A model generated the notes under the pieces. The model did not search any database and was not told where the DNA came from. It saw only the letters and a list, made by a program, of their open reading frames with translations. This document shows, in pieces, positions 28,233-54,067 of a stretch of 64,000 bases of DNA. Position 1 is the stretch's first letter, and the number at the start of each line of letters is the position of its first letter. The DNA lies in IMG/VR virus record IMGVR_UViG_3300005537_000001, positions 62,001 to 126,000 of that record. One strand, 5' to 3'. Both the position numbers and the translations under genes were made by a program.

Positions 28233-28261
28233 TTTACACCAGACCAGATGCGTGATAGAAT
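28233..28261 (+). promoter_or_regulatory. sigma70-like promoter of tmRNA
   Basis: TTTACA-17-TAGAAT with TG. Confidence 0.7.
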
Positions 28262-28267
28262 AAGTTT

Positions 28268-28623
28268 GAAAACAGCGTAAACGTAGATTGCGAAAATTGG
28301 TGACACCCGGGTTCGAATCCCGGCATCTCCACCAAAAGCATCTTCTTTTGGGGCAGACCTTTGAGGAGTCGAGGTAGCAACGTAAACCCTCCAGTAAATG
28401 TTGCATTGAGGATGCTTTTGATGGGGATGATACATGGCATTCGACCATCAGTGAATAACCTTCTATGCGCTCGATAGGCGTTCGCCGTAAGCGAAGCAAA
28501 TCCAATAAAAGCTAATGATGCTTTTTTCGGGGAAGAACTACGCCTAGCGGCCTAGTCCCTGCGGGGCTTAAACCACCCTGTAACCTAACGGTTAGGGAGG
28601 AGATCAGACAAGGGTCTCCTCCC
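28268..28623 (+). ncRNA. ssrA: circularly permuted two-piece tmRNA, tag ANDAFFGEELRLAA
   Basis: T-arm and CATCTCC-ACCA at 28306-28334 precede GGGGATG at 28423; G3:U70 pair; tag 28511-28555. Confidence 0.9.
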
Positions 28624-28646
28624 GCTCCTACGCTAGGAGGCGTGAA

Positions 28647-28931
28647 TTGAAAGAAGAAAAATCCGTTCACCGGGTAACAAAGCTTGAAGTAGATATTCTA
28701 CTCATTTTCTACAACTTCTCCGATCAAAACGGAGTTGTCGATATCAAGAACGCGTCAGTTTGGGCTAAGAATAAGCTTGGCGTTGACATTCCGCAAAAGC
28801 CGTTTACGCTCACGCAAAAGCACTTTGATTTTCTCATGGATAGAGGCGTGATCCCAGATACCCGCACGATGATGCAGAACTTGTTGAATCCGAAACCACC
28901 GGTTGATATTCCGGAAGAACCATATCCTTAA
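28647..28931 (+). CDS. hypothetical protein
   Basis: AGGAGG RBS. Confidence 0.6.
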   Translation: MKEEKSVHRVTKLEVDILLIFYNFSDQNGVVDIKNASVWAKNKLGVDIPQKPFTLTQKHFDFLMDRGVIPDTRTMMQNLLNPKPPVDIPEEPYP

Positions 28932-29944: not shown

Positions 29945-30240
29945 TATGCAGTCAATCATCCTCATAATACTCGGTGGAATTGGTTTAGGCCTATCCTTGG
30001 AAGTTCCTCACCGTGAGAACTTTACACCTGACCACGCGGTTGGTGCCGGCGTCTGCGGAATTTTGTGGGTTATGCTCTGCTTCGCGCTAGCGATGAGGCT
30101 AACGTTTGCCGCGTAATCTACATAAATGAAGATCACGGTTACGCAGGTTAAGAGAAAGTTTACTTTTTGGGGATTCTGTATATAACTATATCAAATCAAC
30201 TAAACGCTAGTTGATCACTTCTAACCAACGTGGAGCACGT

Positions 30241-31359
30241 ATGGACAAAAAGAAAGAAATTACCGTATTCATCGGTCGATTTTCCCCATTTCACAATGGT
30301 CACGCTGAAGTGCTCAAGCGGGCGCTGGAAACCTCACAAGTAGTTCTCGTGCTGGTTGGCAGCTCTGGGCAGGCACGGACCACCAAAAATCCCTTCACCT
30401 TCGAAGAACGCCGTCAGATGATTACCGACTACGTTCGATACCTAGGCGCGATATGGCGCCCTGGTCAGGGAGGTGAGCTAATTGTCGAACCAATCTACGA
30501 TCATCCCTACAACGACAACAAGTGGATTGAAGGCGTCCAAGCCGTTGTCAACAGGGTAAAGGCAGAAAATACCAGCCTTCGTGGACTGTCAAACTGGTAC
30601 AATTATCTTACCGGCTCAGATCGCGACGCAACTACCTGGTATCTCAACGCCTTCGGTGATTTCTTCGAGAAGGACCTTATCACCAACCATTCAGCTGGAT
30701 TAGACTTAAGCGCGACAAAGATTCGTGACATTCTATTCAACACGGAAACGCTGGTTGAGCTTGAAGTCAAGCTGAATAAGCTTGTACCGTCATCGACTCT
30801 CAGCCACCTGATCGCGTTCGTGGATCATCACCCAGCATATTCGGAGCTGGCGAAGGAATACCTGTACATTGAAAGGTACAAGGAGAGCTACAAGCTGGCT
30901 CCCTATCCGGTAAGCATTCAAACCGTCGACGCGTGCGTGATTCAATCCGGACACGTGCTTGTCTGCGTTCGCGACAACTTCCCCGGCAAGGGGCTTTGGT
31001 GCCTGCCGGGTGGACATCTTGACATTGATCTCGGAGAACGCCTCCTTGACGCGGCCATCCGTGAGCTCACGGAGGAAACTCGAATCGAGCTTTCAAAAGC
31101 GCAGCTTTATGGCTCCGTGCGTGACAAGGAGGTGTTCGATCATCCCGGCCGCAGCCTCAAGGGTCGAGTTATAACGATGGCCTACCTCTTGAAGCTGGAC
31201 GATACGAAACCCCTACCGAAGGTGAAACCTCAGAAGGGAGAGGTTAAGAAGGTAATGTGGTTGCCGATCGCCGAAGCGCTGTCGAGCAAGAACATGGACA
31301 AGTGGTTCGACGATCACTATTCGATTTTGGAAACCCTATACGGGCGGATTAAAAACTGA
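30241..31359 (+). CDS. nadM: bifunctional NMN adenylyltransferase/Nudix ADP-ribose pyrophosphatase
   Basis: GRFSPFHNGH; Nudix box GG...GE....AA.REL.EET. Confidence 0.92.
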   Translation: MDKKKEITVFIGRFSPFHNGHAEVLKRALETSQVVLVLVGSSGQARTTKNPFTFEERRQMITDYVRYLGAIWRPGQGGELIVEPIYDHPYNDNKWIEGVQAVVNRVKAENTSLRGLSNWYNYLTGSDRDATTWYLNAFGDFFEKDLITNHSAGLDLSATKIRDILFNTETLVELEVKLNKLVPSSTLSHLIAFVDHHPAYSELAKEYLYIERYKESYKLAPYPVSIQTVDACVIQSGHVLVCVRDNFPGKGLWCLPGGHLDIDLGERLLDAAIRELTEETRIELSKAQLYGSVRDKEVFDHPGRSLKGRVITMAYLLKLDDTKPLPKVKPQKGEVKKVMWLPIAEALSSKNMDKWFDDHYSILETLYGRIKN

Positions 31360-31398
31360 GAGAACGACTCTCAGGTCATTCACGATAAGGAGCTTATC

Positions 31399-32889
31399 AT
31401 GGCAGCAAAAAGAAAAGAATTTACGGTCGAGCAATACCTCTCTCCTTCCAAGAAGGATATTGAGTATATGCAGCCGGATCAGTTGAAAATCAGCTTGATC
31501 TGCCGCATGGACAGCTACAAGTTTGCGCACCCCTTCGCTTACCGTAAGGGAATTCAGGCGATGAGCGCCCACATGCTGGCGCGAGTCAAGAGCCACGTTA
31601 CGATCATTCCAGCCGGAATGCAACTGCTGACCAAGAAGTATCTAACGCAGCGCATCACGATGGCCGACGTGGACGCCGCAGAGCAATTTGCGATTGGTCA
31701 CTTTGGCCGCAAGCTCTTCGCTCGCGACAGCTGGGAAGGCGTTGTCAACGAGCATGGCGGAGCCATTCCCATCATCATCCGCGCGGTGCCGGAAGGTACT
31801 CGAATTCGCGGTGGGCAGCCGCTGTATTCAGTAACGGCGTTCGGTGAGCTGTATTACTGGATGTCAACCGCCTTCGAAACGCTCCTGCAGCGCGGTATCT
31901 GGTATCCAACGACCATCGCCACGATGGACTACGATATCAAAAATGATATTCGTATGTTCTACGAAGATACTGGCGCGGACATGGCGATGCTTCCATTCGC
32001 TCTCCACGATTTCGGTGCTCGCGGTGTGACCGCACCCGAACAGGCAGAAATTGGCGGTTTTGCCCACACGATTGGATTCATGGGTTCAGACAACATCGAA
32101 GGAATACTTACCGCAAACTTCTACTACAAGTGCGCGATGTCGGCTTTCTCGGTCTACGCTACCGAGCACAGCGTTGAGTGCTCCTTCGGGCTGGGTTCTG
32201 AGGATGAGGTTGAGTACATTCGACATCAGCTGCGTCAAGCTCCAGCTGGATCGATAGTTTCGATCGTCATCGACGGTAAGGATACCTACCGAGCAACCGA
32301 AGCGATCTGCACAACGCTTCGAGATGAGGTGATCGCGTGCAAGGCGAAGGTAGTTCTTCGCCCAGACAGCGGTGATATGCAGGAAATCGTTCCTCGCCTG
32401 CTCCGCCGGCTCGATCAAGCGTTTGGGCACGTCGTTAACAAGAAGGGCTTCAAGAAGATCAACTACGTTGGTATCCTGCAGGGAGACGGAGTCGATCACC
32501 TCGCGATTCGCAGCCTGCTTGGCAACATCATGTCGCGTGGATATTCGGCCGACAACGTTATCTTCGGCAGCGGAGGTGCGCTGCTGCAGAAGGTCAACCG
32601 TGACACCTACAAGTTCGCCCAAAAGGCGAGCGCCATGATGGTTGATGGGAAGTGGATTGGATTGGCGAAAGATCCCATCACCGACAAAGGTAAGAAATCG
32701 GAGGAAGGCGTGCTCACCTTGCTTCGCAGTCGAATGACCGGAGAGCTGATGACCGGTCGGTTGGACGATGGTCCATTCGACACCGAGTGGGAAGATGTTC
32801 ACCAGCTTGTCTATCACTGCGGCCGTCTCTTCAACGAGACAACCCTCGATGAGGTTCGCAATCGGGTTGAAGCCCTAGGAAACTACTGA
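31399..32889 (+). CDS. nadV: nicotinamide phosphoribosyltransferase
   Basis: DSYK..H, HDFG.RG, ATEHS, RPDSGD, QGDGV, FGSGG.LLQK..RDT. Confidence 0.93.
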   Translation: MAAKRKEFTVEQYLSPSKKDIEYMQPDQLKISLICRMDSYKFAHPFAYRKGIQAMSAHMLARVKSHVTIIPAGMQLLTKKYLTQRITMADVDAAEQFAIGHFGRKLFARDSWEGVVNEHGGAIPIIIRAVPEGTRIRGGQPLYSVTAFGELYYWMSTAFETLLQRGIWYPTTIATMDYDIKNDIRMFYEDTGADMAMLPFALHDFGARGVTAPEQAEIGGFAHTIGFMGSDNIEGILTANFYYKCAMSAFSVYATEHSVECSFGLGSEDEVEYIRHQLRQAPAGSIVSIVIDGKDTYRATEAICTTLRDEVIACKAKVVLRPDSGDMQEIVPRLLRRLDQAFGHVVNKKGFKKINYVGILQGDGVDHLAIRSLLGNIMSRGYSADNVIFGSGGALLQKVNRDTYKFAQKASAMMVDGKWIGLAKDPITDKGKKSEEGVLTLLRSRMTGELMTGRLDDGPFDTEWEDVHQLVYHCGRLFNETTLDEVRNRVEALGNY

Positions 32890-45787: not shown

Positions 45788-45913
45788 GAGGTAATAGCTC
45801 AATAGTAGAGCATCAGGGAAGTAGAAGAAATAGGAACTACGCTGAAGTACAAAGCGACTATCTAAAGTATTGAAAACCGGAAGACAATGGTGCGATCCCA
45901 TTTTACTTCACCA
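45788..45913 (+). tRNA. tRNA-Phe(GAA)-like gene with 52-nt insert
   Basis: acceptor, D and T arms intact; TTGAAAA loop after insert. Confidence 0.65.
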
Positions 45914-47625: not shown

Positions 47626-47748
47626 GAGGAAGTAGCTCAGTGGCAGAGCAGCCGCCAAACATCGTTTACGATATTTTGTCGAGCAATCGACCGTTGTATA
47701 ATGGTTATCCAAAGCAGCTTGTCGTAGGTTCGAATCCTATCTTCCTCT
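47626..47748 (+). tRNA. tRNA-Trp(CCA)-like gene interrupted by element copy 4 (47661-47709)
   Basis: GAGGAAG/CTTCCTC acceptor; TCCAAA directly after element. Confidence 0.65.
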
Positions 47749-53952: not shown

Positions 53953-54067
53953 TTCTGACTGTTGACAAGCCGTCGTAACGAGAAGGTGGACCTAGGGACT
54001 TTTACGGCTTTCTACCTAGGGCGTCAACGCATTGGCACTCGAGCGCTAAAATCGTTACAGTCAGATT

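What the first reader, a model, noticed from the sequence alone, without database searches (positions are those of the whole stretch)
28268..28623. Circularly permuted two-piece tmRNA in a phage
The acceptor piece (ending CTCCACCA at 28334) precedes the coding piece (GGGGATG at 28423). The 88-nt intervening segment is closed by CAAAAGCATC/GATGCTTTTG. P2 pairs across the pieces (CATCAGT/ATTGGTG, TCTATG/CGTAGA, CGCT/AGCG), and it has its own promoter. Established: two-piece tmRNAs occur in Alphaproteobacteria and some cyanobacteria and betaproteobacteria. The tag ...ELRLAA recalls rhizobial-type tags, hinting at an alphaproteobacterial host. No smpB was seen in the window.
Basis: partly seen in the sequence, partly recalled or inferred. 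Interest (0 to 1): 0.78.

Follow-up and report, generated by a model that had tools for sequence, protein, structure and literature searches.

The report
Two-piece tmRNA gene in jumbo phage
A 368-kb soil jumbo phage carries a genuine, circularly permuted (two-piece) ribosome-rescue RNA gene; this kind of phage gene is already documented, and its form does not reveal the host.

Summary
ARAGORN and Rfam (tmRNA_permuted, 75 bits against a cut-off of 47, E 1e-12) both call a permuted tmRNA at 28242-28646. The acceptor piece ends in CCA at 28334. An 88-nt intervening segment closed by a 13-bp stem follows, and the coding piece starts at G28423. The tag is ANDAFFGEELRLAA. No conventional 3' half lies downstream. 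The genome has no SmpB, AlaRS or integrase.

The gene sits at a syntenic site in related uncultivated jumbo phages, and permuted tmRNAs also occur in the cultured relatives XacN1, RsoM2USA and Phosso. Across 12 orthologues the acceptor stem, T-arm and inter-piece P2 helices covary, and G3.U70 is invariant. A soil metatranscriptome contig matches the coding piece at about 98% identity and ends at its predicted 3' end.

The resume region and 3' domain resemble the betaproteobacterial consensus. The gene falls on the beta side of the alpha/beta split (93% bootstrap), in a clade that contains only phage sequences. Relatives with permuted tmRNAs infect Xanthomonas, Ralstonia and Sinorhizobium.

Phage two-piece tmRNAs are already published (Buchholz 2022; Al-Shayeb 2020). 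This is a new member of a known kind and of modest interest.

The parts
28233..28261 (+). Sigma70-type promoter: -35 TTTACA (28233-28238), 17-nt spacer, extended -10 TGaTAGAAT (28253-28261). The predicted transcription start is about 28268.
   Evidence: 10 of 12 matches, TG present. The same arrangement lies at the same distance upstream in orthologues L056 and L042, and probably L055. The -10 aligns with the UAuAAU box modelled in Rfam beta_tmRNA.
28268..28334 (+). Acceptor piece (3' half of the tRNA-like domain). It holds the P2c strand 28274-28277, P2b strand 28282-28287, P2a strand 28296-28302, T-arm 28307-28323 (T-loop UUCGAAU), acceptor 3' strand CAUCUCC 28324-28330 and the encoded ACCA 28331-28334.
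   Evidence: The 5' end is inferred from the promoter only.
28335..28422 (+). Intervening segment of 88 nt, predicted to be excised. It is closed by a 13-bp stem (28333-28345 / 28408-28420) that stacks on the acceptor stem.
   Evidence: fold, -32.4 kcal/mol. The segment is 13 to 410 nt long and unconserved across the 12 orthologues, as expected for a spacer that is discarded.
28423..28510 (+). 5' part of the coding piece. It holds the acceptor 5' strand GGGGAUG 28423-28429 (G3.U70 with U28328), the D-loop-like region with UUCGAC 28440-28445, P2a 28446-28452, P2b 28462-28467, P2c 28468-28471, a weak hairpin at the PK1 position 28472-28487, and the leader GCAAAUCCAAUAAAA before the resume codon.
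28511..28555 (+). Tag reading frame: resume codon GCU (Ala), tag ANDAFFGEELRLAA, stop UAG at 28553-28555.
   Evidence: A relative in RNA run X2 differs in this frame only by one synonymous change (28516) and one Phe-to-Tyr change (28527), and keeps UAG.
28556..28623 (+). 3' domain of the coding piece. The beta-type motif CGGGGCU...CCACCCUGUAACCUAACGGU ends at 28592. It is followed by a terminal 11-bp GC-rich hairpin at 28595-28623. No U-tract follows.
   Evidence: alignment to the beta_tmRNA consensus; the same domain occurs in L055, L056, L057, XacN1 and Phosso. One search found no canonical terminator.
28625..28639 (+). Second small hairpin, CUCCUA-CGC-UAGGAG. Its 3' strand contains the AGGAGG Shine-Dalgarno of the next ORF. 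It probably belongs to that ORF's translation-initiation region.
   Evidence: The RNA-library contig ends at 28644.
28647..28931 (+). g138, a conserved 94-aa ORF of unknown function, immediately downstream of the tmRNA in ours and seven tmRNA-carrying relatives, and retained at the same site in G159, which lacks the tmRNA. It is listed as context, not as a demonstrated part of the tmRNA system.
   Evidence: No Pfam or PHROG family matches. The AlphaFold model has pLDDT 83 and no significant fold match.

Best explanation
This is a functional, phage-encoded, circularly permuted ssrA gene.

Inferred mechanism. Host RNA polymerase transcribes a precursor of about 380 nt from the promoter at 28233-28261. 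Host tRNA-maturation enzymes process it: RNase P cuts 5' of G28423, and trimming exposes the encoded CCA at 28334. This removes the 88-nt intervening segment. The acceptor piece (about 61-67 nt) and the coding piece (about 200-220 nt) stay together through the 7-bp acceptor stem and the three-part P2 helix.

Host AlaRS charges the molecule through G3.U70. Host SmpB and EF-Tu deliver it to ribosomes stalled on truncated mRNAs. Translation resumes at GCU 28511 and appends ANDAFFGEELRLAA. The ...LAA end of the tag targets the product to host proteases.

For the phage, the likely benefit is a supply of free ribosomes, and recycled amino acids, while host mRNAs are being destroyed and 44 phage tRNAs, including two amber suppressors, are reshaping translation.

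What is shown: gene anatomy, conservation, covariation, and presence in an RNA library. What is inferred: processing, charging, tagging, and the benefit to the phage.
For: Two independent detectors call the gene.

All hallmark features are present:
- G1-C, G2-C and G3.U70
- a canonical T-loop
- an encoded CCA
- a UUCGAC D-region
- an Ala resume codon
- a tag ending in LAA followed by a stop

The gene is syntenic in related jumbo phages. It lies between homologues of g133 and g138 in G001/G002 and in seven further IMG/VR contigs. Permuted tmRNAs also occur in the cultured relatives XacN1, RsoM2USA and Phosso.

Across 12 orthologues, acceptor-stem positions 4-6 and the T-stem covary, and there are only 2 non-canonical pairs in 144. 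RNAduplex recovers the same P2 architecture in all 11 orthologues tested. Cognate arms pair better than non-cognate arms, -13.1 against -9.7 kcal/mol, with 0 of 20,000 permutations reaching the observed mean. The intervening segment is hypervariable at 13-410 nt.

A 206-nt contig from a soil metatranscriptome matches 28472-28644 with 2 substitutions and 1 deletion. One substitution in the tag frame is synonymous and the other is conservative. The contig ends where the coding piece is predicted to end.

There is no downstream conventional 3' half and no standard tmRNA in the genome. There is no integrase.
Against: Scores against the lineage-specific models are low: alpha 46.5 against a cut-off of 50, and beta 48.6 against 84. 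True bacterial beta genes score 222-336. This is therefore a divergent member. The hairpin at the PK1 position has two non-canonical pairs.

The genome has no SmpB, so function depends on compatibility with an unknown host's SmpB. A complete 343-kb relative lacks the gene, so it is dispensable in the clade.

The RNA evidence is a single low-depth assembled contig from a relative. The library could contain DNA, and the contig does not show the two pieces or their ends directly. No U-tract terminator is present.
Confidence: 0.85

Rival explanations
1. The gene is a decaying relic of a captured bacterial ssrA. It is recognisable but no longer active in trans-translation.
For: It has the lowest model scores among the orthologues: 75 bits against 95-143 for RF04321, and 48.6 against 79-113 for beta. 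The hairpin at the PK1 position is weakened. It uses an unusual UAG stop. The gene is absent from a complete relative.
Against: Every element essential for function is intact in ours, with zero non-canonical pairs in the acceptor stem and T-arm. Its own P2 arm ranks first among 12 as the partner for its coding strand. The near-identical relative in run X2 shows only a synonymous and a conservative change in the tag frame. The promoter is good.
Confidence: 0.07
2. The RNA acts as a decoy or antagonist. It competes with the host's own tmRNA for SmpB, AlaRS or stalled ribosomes. Its purpose would be to block or redirect host trans-translation, for example to escape tmRNA-dependent sensing or defence, rather than to rescue ribosomes for the phage.
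For: The phage brings no SmpB, so its RNA must share the host's pool. A tRNA-like-domain-only tmRNA from mycobacteriophage DS6A is reported to resemble molecules that inhibit tmRNA (PMC4131195). The tag differs in length and sequence from the bacterial beta tags, 14 aa against ANDERFALAA.
Against: A pure decoy would not need a conserved resume codon, reading frame...AA end and stop, yet all 12 orthologues keep them. The tag retains the canonical LAA end.
Confidence: 0.06
3. The sequence is an attP-type fragment of ssrA, carried because the phage integrates into the host tmRNA gene.
For: Integrating elements often carry 3' fragments of ssrA (literature).
Against: Both halves of the tRNA-like domain, the P2 strands, the tag frame and a promoter are all present. 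The genome has no tyrosine integrase. The genome is a 368-kb virion-type molecule with direct terminal repeats.
Confidence: 0.01

Closest known systems
Permuted tmRNA of Xanthomonas phage XacN1 (AP018399, 37231-37530 and its terminal-repeat copy). Listed as 'Permuted' in Table S1 of Buchholz et al. 2022, but not annotated in the record or mentioned in the 2018 genome paper.
   Same: It is a jumbo myovirus of the same broad clade (terminase 41% identical). It has a permuted tmRNA with the same 3'-domain type (CCAC...GUCACCGAACG plus a GC-rich hairpin). It has two tRNA(CUA) suppressors. The tag has the same style, ANANTFDYALAA.
   Different: XacN1's tRNA-like arm is 'type II' and groups with bacterial beta genes, whereas ours is in the phage-only 'type I' clade. 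Its stop is UAA. It lies next to a tRNA cluster rather than behind its own promoter.
Betaproteobacterial two-piece tmRNA (Rfam RF01850: Rhodocyclaceae such as Accumulibacter, Thauera, Azoarcus and Dechloromonas).
   Same: The gene order is permuted. The leader before the resume codon is nearly the consensus (GCAAAUCC-AUAAA-GC-AA-GAUG). The 3' motif GGGGCU...CCUUGUUACCAAA and the terminal hairpin match. The promoter position matches. The bacterial tags ANDERFALAA resemble the phage tags.
   Different: Ours scores 48.6 bits against a cut-off of 84, and bacterial members score 222-336. The P2 strands do not fit the model. The tag is 14 aa rather than 10. Nucleotide similarity is limited to about 51 nt.
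Alphaproteobacterial two-piece tmRNA (Rfam RF01849: Caulobacter, rhizobia) and their phages (phiCbK-like phages, pelagimyophages, Melnitz).
   Same: It works the same way: acceptor piece first, an excised spacer, and the two pieces held by P1 and P2. The rhizobial tag ANDNYAEARLAA shares the ...RLAA end.
   Different: Ours scores just below the alpha threshold (46.5 against 50). It lies across a 93%-supported split from the alpha genes. It lacks the ANDN start that 25 of the 26 sampled alpha tags share, the other reading ANNN. Of the phages examined here, only Phosso, a Sinorhizobium phage, groups with alpha.

Membership tests
tmRNA, permuted (two-piece) form (Rfam RF04321) | Score at or above the curated gathering threshold of the family model | tested here: met
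   75.1 bits against 47, E 1.4e-12, full-length match to model positions 1-213. ARAGORN independently calls 'tmRNA*'.
tmRNA, permuted (two-piece) form (Rfam RF04321) | tRNA-like domain: 7-bp acceptor stem with G3.U70 (the alanine identity element), a T-arm with a canonical T-loop, and a 3' CCA | tested here: met
   GGGGAUG pairs with CAUCUCC, with G28425.U28328. The T-arm is CCGGG-UUCGAAU-CCCGG. ACCA is encoded at 28331-28334. G3.U70 is invariant in 12 orthologues.
tmRNA, permuted (two-piece) form (Rfam RF04321) | Permuted gene order: the 3' (acceptor) half lies upstream of the 5' (coding) half, and no conventional 3' half lies downstream | tested here: met
   The CCA end at 28334 precedes G1 at 28423. 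The only exact CATCTCCACCA in the window is the upstream one. The standard tmRNA model RF00023 has no hit above threshold in the genome.
tmRNA, permuted (two-piece) form (Rfam RF04321) | Long-range P2 pairing that holds the two pieces together, supported by covariation | tested here: met
   The same three-part duplex appears in all 11 orthologues tested, with compensatory changes. Cognate beats non-cognate pairing, with 0 of 20,000 permutations reaching the observed mean.
tmRNA, permuted (two-piece) form (Rfam RF04321) | mRNA-like domain: an Ala resume codon, a short tag frame ending in hydrophobic residues plus AA, and an in-frame stop | tested here: met
   GCU at 28511, tag ANDAFFGEELRLAA, UAG at 28553. 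All orthologue tags are AN...AA.
tmRNA, permuted (two-piece) form (Rfam RF04321) | The precursor is processed into two stable RNA pieces in vivo | tested here: inconclusive
   One 206-nt contig from a soil metatranscriptome covers 28472-28644 of a near-identical relative. It stops at the predicted 3' end and does not enter the spacer or the next ORF. It is a single low-depth contig without strand or end information.
tmRNA, permuted (two-piece) form (Rfam RF04321) | SmpB-dependent trans-translation activity | not testable with these tools
   No SmpB gene is present in the phage, and the host is unknown. This needs an experiment.
alpha_tmRNA (RF01849) | Score at or above the gathering threshold, and grouping with alphaproteobacterial genes | tested here: not met
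   46.5 bits against 50. The split of alpha plus Phosso from all others, including ours, has 93% bootstrap support. The tag lacks the ANDN start seen in 25 of the 26 sampled alpha tags.
beta_tmRNA (RF01850) | Score at or above the gathering threshold | tested here: not met
   48.6 bits against 84. Bacterial members score 222-336. Five phage orthologues do pass, at 84.7-113.5.
beta_tmRNA (RF01850) | Lineage-specific resume-region and 3'-domain motifs | tested here: met
   The alignment to the consensus shows conserved GCAAAUCC.AUAAA.GC.AA.GAUG, CGGGGCU, CCyUGUaACC.AA and the terminal hairpin. The resume-region pattern hits mainly Rhodocyclaceae among 112 bacterial stretches.
cyano_tmRNA (RF01851) | Any significant match | tested here: not met
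   There is no match at the locus. The best hit in the genome has E 1.3 and lies in a tRNA.

The most novel reading that the evidence does not exclude
The tag frame of this tmRNA is the only one of 12 orthologues that ends in UAG, and the same genome carries two tRNA(CUA) amber suppressors. If those suppressors read the tag's stop, the tag would gain one suppressor-inserted residue plus SLRGLNHPVT (the next stop is UAA at 28586-28588). That would bury the C-terminal LAA degron. The phage could then switch trans-translation from 'rescue and destroy' to 'rescue and keep' once the suppressors accumulate. More generally, suppressor tRNAs and a phage tmRNA may travel together because amber read-through creates extra non-stop ribosomes. 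XacN1 also pairs two CUA suppressors with its tmRNA.
Probability: 0.06. Interest if true: 0.65.

Novelty: new member of a known kind. Interest (0 to 1): 0.3.

Why it matters
The finding itself adds little. Huge phages are already known to carry tmRNAs (Al-Shayeb 2020), and a survey found 53 permuted forms among 133 unique phage tmRNAs, XacN1 among them (Buchholz 2022).

The follow-up adds three modest points.
1. The gene is vertically inherited at a fixed locus across a clade of soil jumbo myoviruses whose local GC content ranges from 33 to 57%. It can still be lost, since a complete relative lacks it.
2. These phage genes are modular. Two types of tRNA-like arm and two types of 3' domain occur in all four combinations. 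Ours belongs to a sub-clade that contains only phage sequences and fits neither bacterial lineage model.
3. The form of the tmRNA does not predict the host, which argues against using it as a host marker. Cultured relatives with permuted tmRNAs infect Xanthomonas and Ralstonia, which by textbook knowledge (not tested here) have one-piece tmRNAs.

It also flags unannotated tmRNA genes in the public records of RsoM2USA, Phosso and XacN1.

Tried and rejected
1. **Genome-wide TAG recoding**, which would have explained the suppressor tRNAs. Coverage gains and ORFs merged across a stop were no greater for TAG (4 merged ORFs) than for TGA (5) or TAA (14). Rejected.

2. **DNA similarity to cultured phages.** Neither megablast nor blastn found a match.

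3. **A recent bacterial donor.** blastn of the gene against 80 bacterial loci carrying beta-type tmRNAs found only about 51 nt at 80% identity. Rejected.

4. **g138 as an SmpB-like or RNA-binding partner.** It is the conserved 94-aa ORF immediately downstream. It matches no Pfam or PHROG family. A confident AlphaFold model (pLDDT 83) has no significant match in PDB or AFDB clusters (all E above 0.2, TM below 0.45). It is helical, unlike the SmpB beta-barrel. The lead is closed. Conserved adjacency among related phages is not evidence of a functional link.

5. **attP fragment.** No integrase is present.

6. **A canonical intrinsic terminator.** None was found.

7. **MFE folding of the precursor or of the two pieces.** It recovers P1, the T-arm and the spacer stem but not P2, because local alternatives compete. 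P2 rests on comparative evidence instead.

8. **Other dead ends.**
   - 'relatives' is not available for virus records.
   - Sharkady & Williams 2004 is not held.
   - RNA run X3 gave nothing when laid on the locus.
   - I did not use the count of structure pairs, to avoid typing a long dot-bracket string. Equivalent counts were scripted.

Full report
**What is there.** The window is bases 62001-126000 of a 368,054-bp IMG/VR virus record with direct terminal repeats, rated 100% complete. It is 48% GC. It encodes a tail sheath, a large terminase subunit, ribonucleotide reductase, helicases and topoisomerase II, so it is a jumbo myovirus. It carries 44 tRNA genes and one tmRNA. One DNA run, a soil metagenome, holds the region in full and is probably the source.

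At the finding, ARAGORN calls a permuted tmRNA at 28242-28646 with the tag ANDAFFGEELRLAA. Rfam's tmRNA_permuted model matches 28274-28555 over its full length at 75.1 bits (cut-off 47, E 1.4e-12).

**Check of the observation.**
- CCA ends at 28334 and G1 of the coding piece is 28423, which leaves an 88-nt spacer.
- The spacer is closed by a stem that is in fact 13 bp long (28333-28345 / 28408-28420).
- The acceptor stem GGGGAUG/CAUCUCC contains the G3.U70 alanine identity pair.
- The T-loop is canonical.
- The three P2 segments pair as described.
- A good extended -10 promoter (TTTACA, 17 nt, TGaTAGAAT) sits at 28233-28261.

No second acceptor 3' strand with a T-arm lies downstream. The standard one-piece model has no hit above threshold anywhere in the genome.

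**Evidence that it is a working gene.** Using the terminase and a neighbouring ORF as probes, I found related uncultivated jumbo phages (terminase 67-74% identical).
- In G001/G002 and in seven more contigs, a permuted tmRNA lies in the same block, downstream of the g133 homologue. In eight of these records the g138 homologue was found immediately after it.
- The cultured relatives Xanthomonas phage XacN1, Ralstonia phage RsoM2USA and Sinorhizobium phage Phosso (terminase about 40% identical) also carry permuted tmRNAs at 97-123 bits. PA5oct and Atu_ph07 do not.
- In all three records the site is an unannotated gap.

Across the 12 sequences, acceptor pairs 1-3 are invariant (G-C, G-C, G.U). 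Positions 4-6 and the T-stem covary, and only 2 of 144 pairs are non-canonical. RNAduplex recovers the same three-part P2 in all 11 orthologues tested, with different sequences in each (for example AGCG/CGCU, GAUAG/CUAUC, UGUCG/CGACA). Cognate P2 partners are more stable than non-cognate ones: -13.1 against -9.7 kcal/mol, with 0 of 20,000 permutations reaching the observed mean. The spacer varies from 13 to 410 nt and shows no conservation, as expected for a discarded segment. All tags follow the AN...AA pattern.

**Expression.** Two soil metatranscriptomes share words with the gene. When laid on the locus, run X2 gives one 206-nt contig.
- It matches 28472-28644 with two substitutions and one deletion.
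- Within the tag frame, one change is synonymous (AAU to AAC) and the other is Phe to Tyr. The UAG stop is kept.
- The contig ends just before the next ORF and does not enter the spacer.
- Its remaining 34 nt are a different P2 strand, of the type seen in L058 and L062. It therefore comes from a relative with a swapped tRNA-like module, or from a chimeric assembly.

This is consistent with a discrete coding-piece RNA, but it is a single low-depth contig and does not prove processing.

**Lineage and host.** The three lineage-specific Rfam models give alpha 46.5 (cut-off 50), beta 48.6 (cut-off 84) and cyano nothing. The beta alignment shows that our resume-codon leader, 3' domain and promoter position follow the betaproteobacterial consensus closely, while the P2 strands do not. 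A pattern from the resume region found 112 stretches in bacterial genomes. Nearly all are Rhodocyclaceae, with tags ANDERFALAA, ANDERFAVAA or ANDEHFAIAA. True bacterial beta genes score 222-336 bits.

I sampled 151 genomes of the phylum and obtained 26 alpha references. All but one of their tags start ANDN, and they include the rhizobial ANDNYAEARLAA. In a tree of spacer-stripped sequences:
- The split of alpha plus Phosso from everything else has 93% bootstrap support.
- 'Type II' phage genes (L055, L056, L058, L062, XacN1) join bacterial beta at 77%.
- Ours sits in a phage-only 'type I' clade with L057, L042, G001, L060 and RsoM2USA at 72%.

Two arm types and two 3'-domain types occur in all four combinations, so these genes are mosaic.

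The tag's ...RLAA end does recall rhizobia, but L056 (ANDSVYEDLRLAA) has the same end and passes the beta threshold. Phages with these genes infect gamma-, beta- and alphaproteobacteria. The tmRNA therefore says little about the host. That Xanthomonas and Ralstonia themselves use one-piece tmRNAs is textbook knowledge I could not test here.

**Mechanism.** The genome has no SmpB, no AlaRS and no integrase. The RNA must therefore use the host's RNase P, 3' trimming enzymes, AlaRS, SmpB and EF-Tu. The most likely role is to keep ribosomes free during infection. The tagged products would go to host ClpXP-type proteases through the LAA end; this is inferred from the established tmRNA pathway. A complete 343-kb relative keeps the flanking genes but has no tmRNA anywhere. 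The gene is therefore accessory.

**Comparison with what is known.** Huge phages are known to carry tmRNAs and sometimes SmpB (PMC7162821). Buchholz et al. found 53 permuted forms among 133 unique tmRNA structures in 18,146 phage genomes. Their Table S1 already lists XacN1 as permuted, although the XacN1 genome paper does not mention a tmRNA. A Sinorhizobium jumbo phage with one tmRNA has also been described. This is therefore a new, rather divergent member of a known kind.

**Side lead.** The 94-aa ORF immediately downstream (g138) is conserved next to the tmRNA in seven tmRNA-carrying relatives, and is also present in G159, which has no tmRNA. Its Shine-Dalgarno lies inside the small hairpin at 28625-28639. 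It has no family match and no structural neighbour, and it is helical, not SmpB-like.

**Verdict.** The core interpretation is supported. The host hint is not supported. Novelty is low and interest is 0.3. The one unusual detail is the UAG stop of the tag in a genome with two amber suppressors. It supports a speculative read-through reading, to which I give about 6%.

Noticed in passing
window 62199-62272, and genome position 126682-126759 (just beyond the window end): There are two tRNA genes with a CUA (amber suppressor) anticodon. They are unrelated to each other and to the other phage tRNAs. The genome shows no sign of genome-wide TAG recoding, and TAG is the rarest stop. XacN1 also has two CUA suppressors, 1 kb upstream of its tmRNA. 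Its authors found no target genes for them.
   Followed up: partly
window 28553-28588: The tag frame ends in UAG, the only such case among 12 orthologues (9 use UAA, 2 use UGA). Read-through would add SLRGLNHPVT before a UAA at 28586-28588. The near-identical relative in RNA run X2 keeps the UAG.
   Followed up: partly
window 28472-28644 (run X2 contig): A metatranscriptome contig is about 98% identical over the coding and 3' domain but carries a completely different P2 strand (CGACAGGAUC...GCAACA). This indicates either recent module exchange within the tmRNA gene or an assembly chimera.
   Followed up: partly
window 28647-28931: g138 is a conserved family of proteins of about 90 aa (motif LE.D.LL.FY.FS.Q.G.VD ... 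Q.H.D.LMD.G.IPD.R, often with a basic tail). It lies directly after the tmRNA in the tmRNA-carrying relatives and is also kept in G159, which lacks the tmRNA. No family or fold match was found. Its ribosome-binding site is sequestered in a hairpin.
   Followed up: yes
L045:1530-1560 (G001) and L060 (near 9740): The orthologous tmRNAs of G001/G002 and L060 have a non-canonical T-loop, GGCAGUG in place of UUCGAAU. They otherwise score well (100 bits). This is odd for a domain that must mimic tRNA.
   Followed up: no
L084 (MG752970 331728-331923, minus strand); L085 (PV764938 349596-350198, minus strand); L083 (AP018399 37231-37530): The public records of RsoM2USA, Phosso and XacN1 contain unannotated permuted tmRNA genes. 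Phosso's has a 410-nt spacer and RsoM2USA's has only 13 nt. ARAGORN miscalls the RsoM2USA tag; the alignment gives ANDSRYAVAA.
   Followed up: partly
L061 5400-8400, and the whole of G159 (343,229 bp, terminal repeats): A complete relative keeps the g133 and g138 neighbours but has no permuted tmRNA anywhere. Only a 112-nt tRNA-model match lies in the interval.
   Followed up: yes
window 53953-54062: There is a borderline Rfam match to the Rhizobiales sRNA Atu_At1 (60.1 bits, cut-off 60). It lies directly upstream of tRNA-Ser(CGA), inside the tRNA array. It may be a tRNA-related sequence rather than that sRNA.
   Followed up: no
window 45788-45910 and 47626-47748: There are two Rfam tRNA matches of 123 nt (41.8 and 46.6 bits) that ARAGORN does not call. 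They could be tRNAs with an insertion or intron, or degenerate copies.
   Followed up: no
window 30211-32889: An NAD-salvage pair lies just downstream: a NadR-like cytidylyl/adenylyltransferase fused to a Nudix domain (30211-31359), and nicotinamide phosphoribosyltransferase (31399-32889).
   Followed up: no
table (bacterial genomes G074, G154, G058 and others): About 20 proteobacterial genomes give RF04321 hits only just above the cut-off (47-65 bits), mostly on small contigs. The cut-off alone may therefore admit doubtful calls. Ours (75 bits) needed the extra comparative evidence.
   Followed up: no
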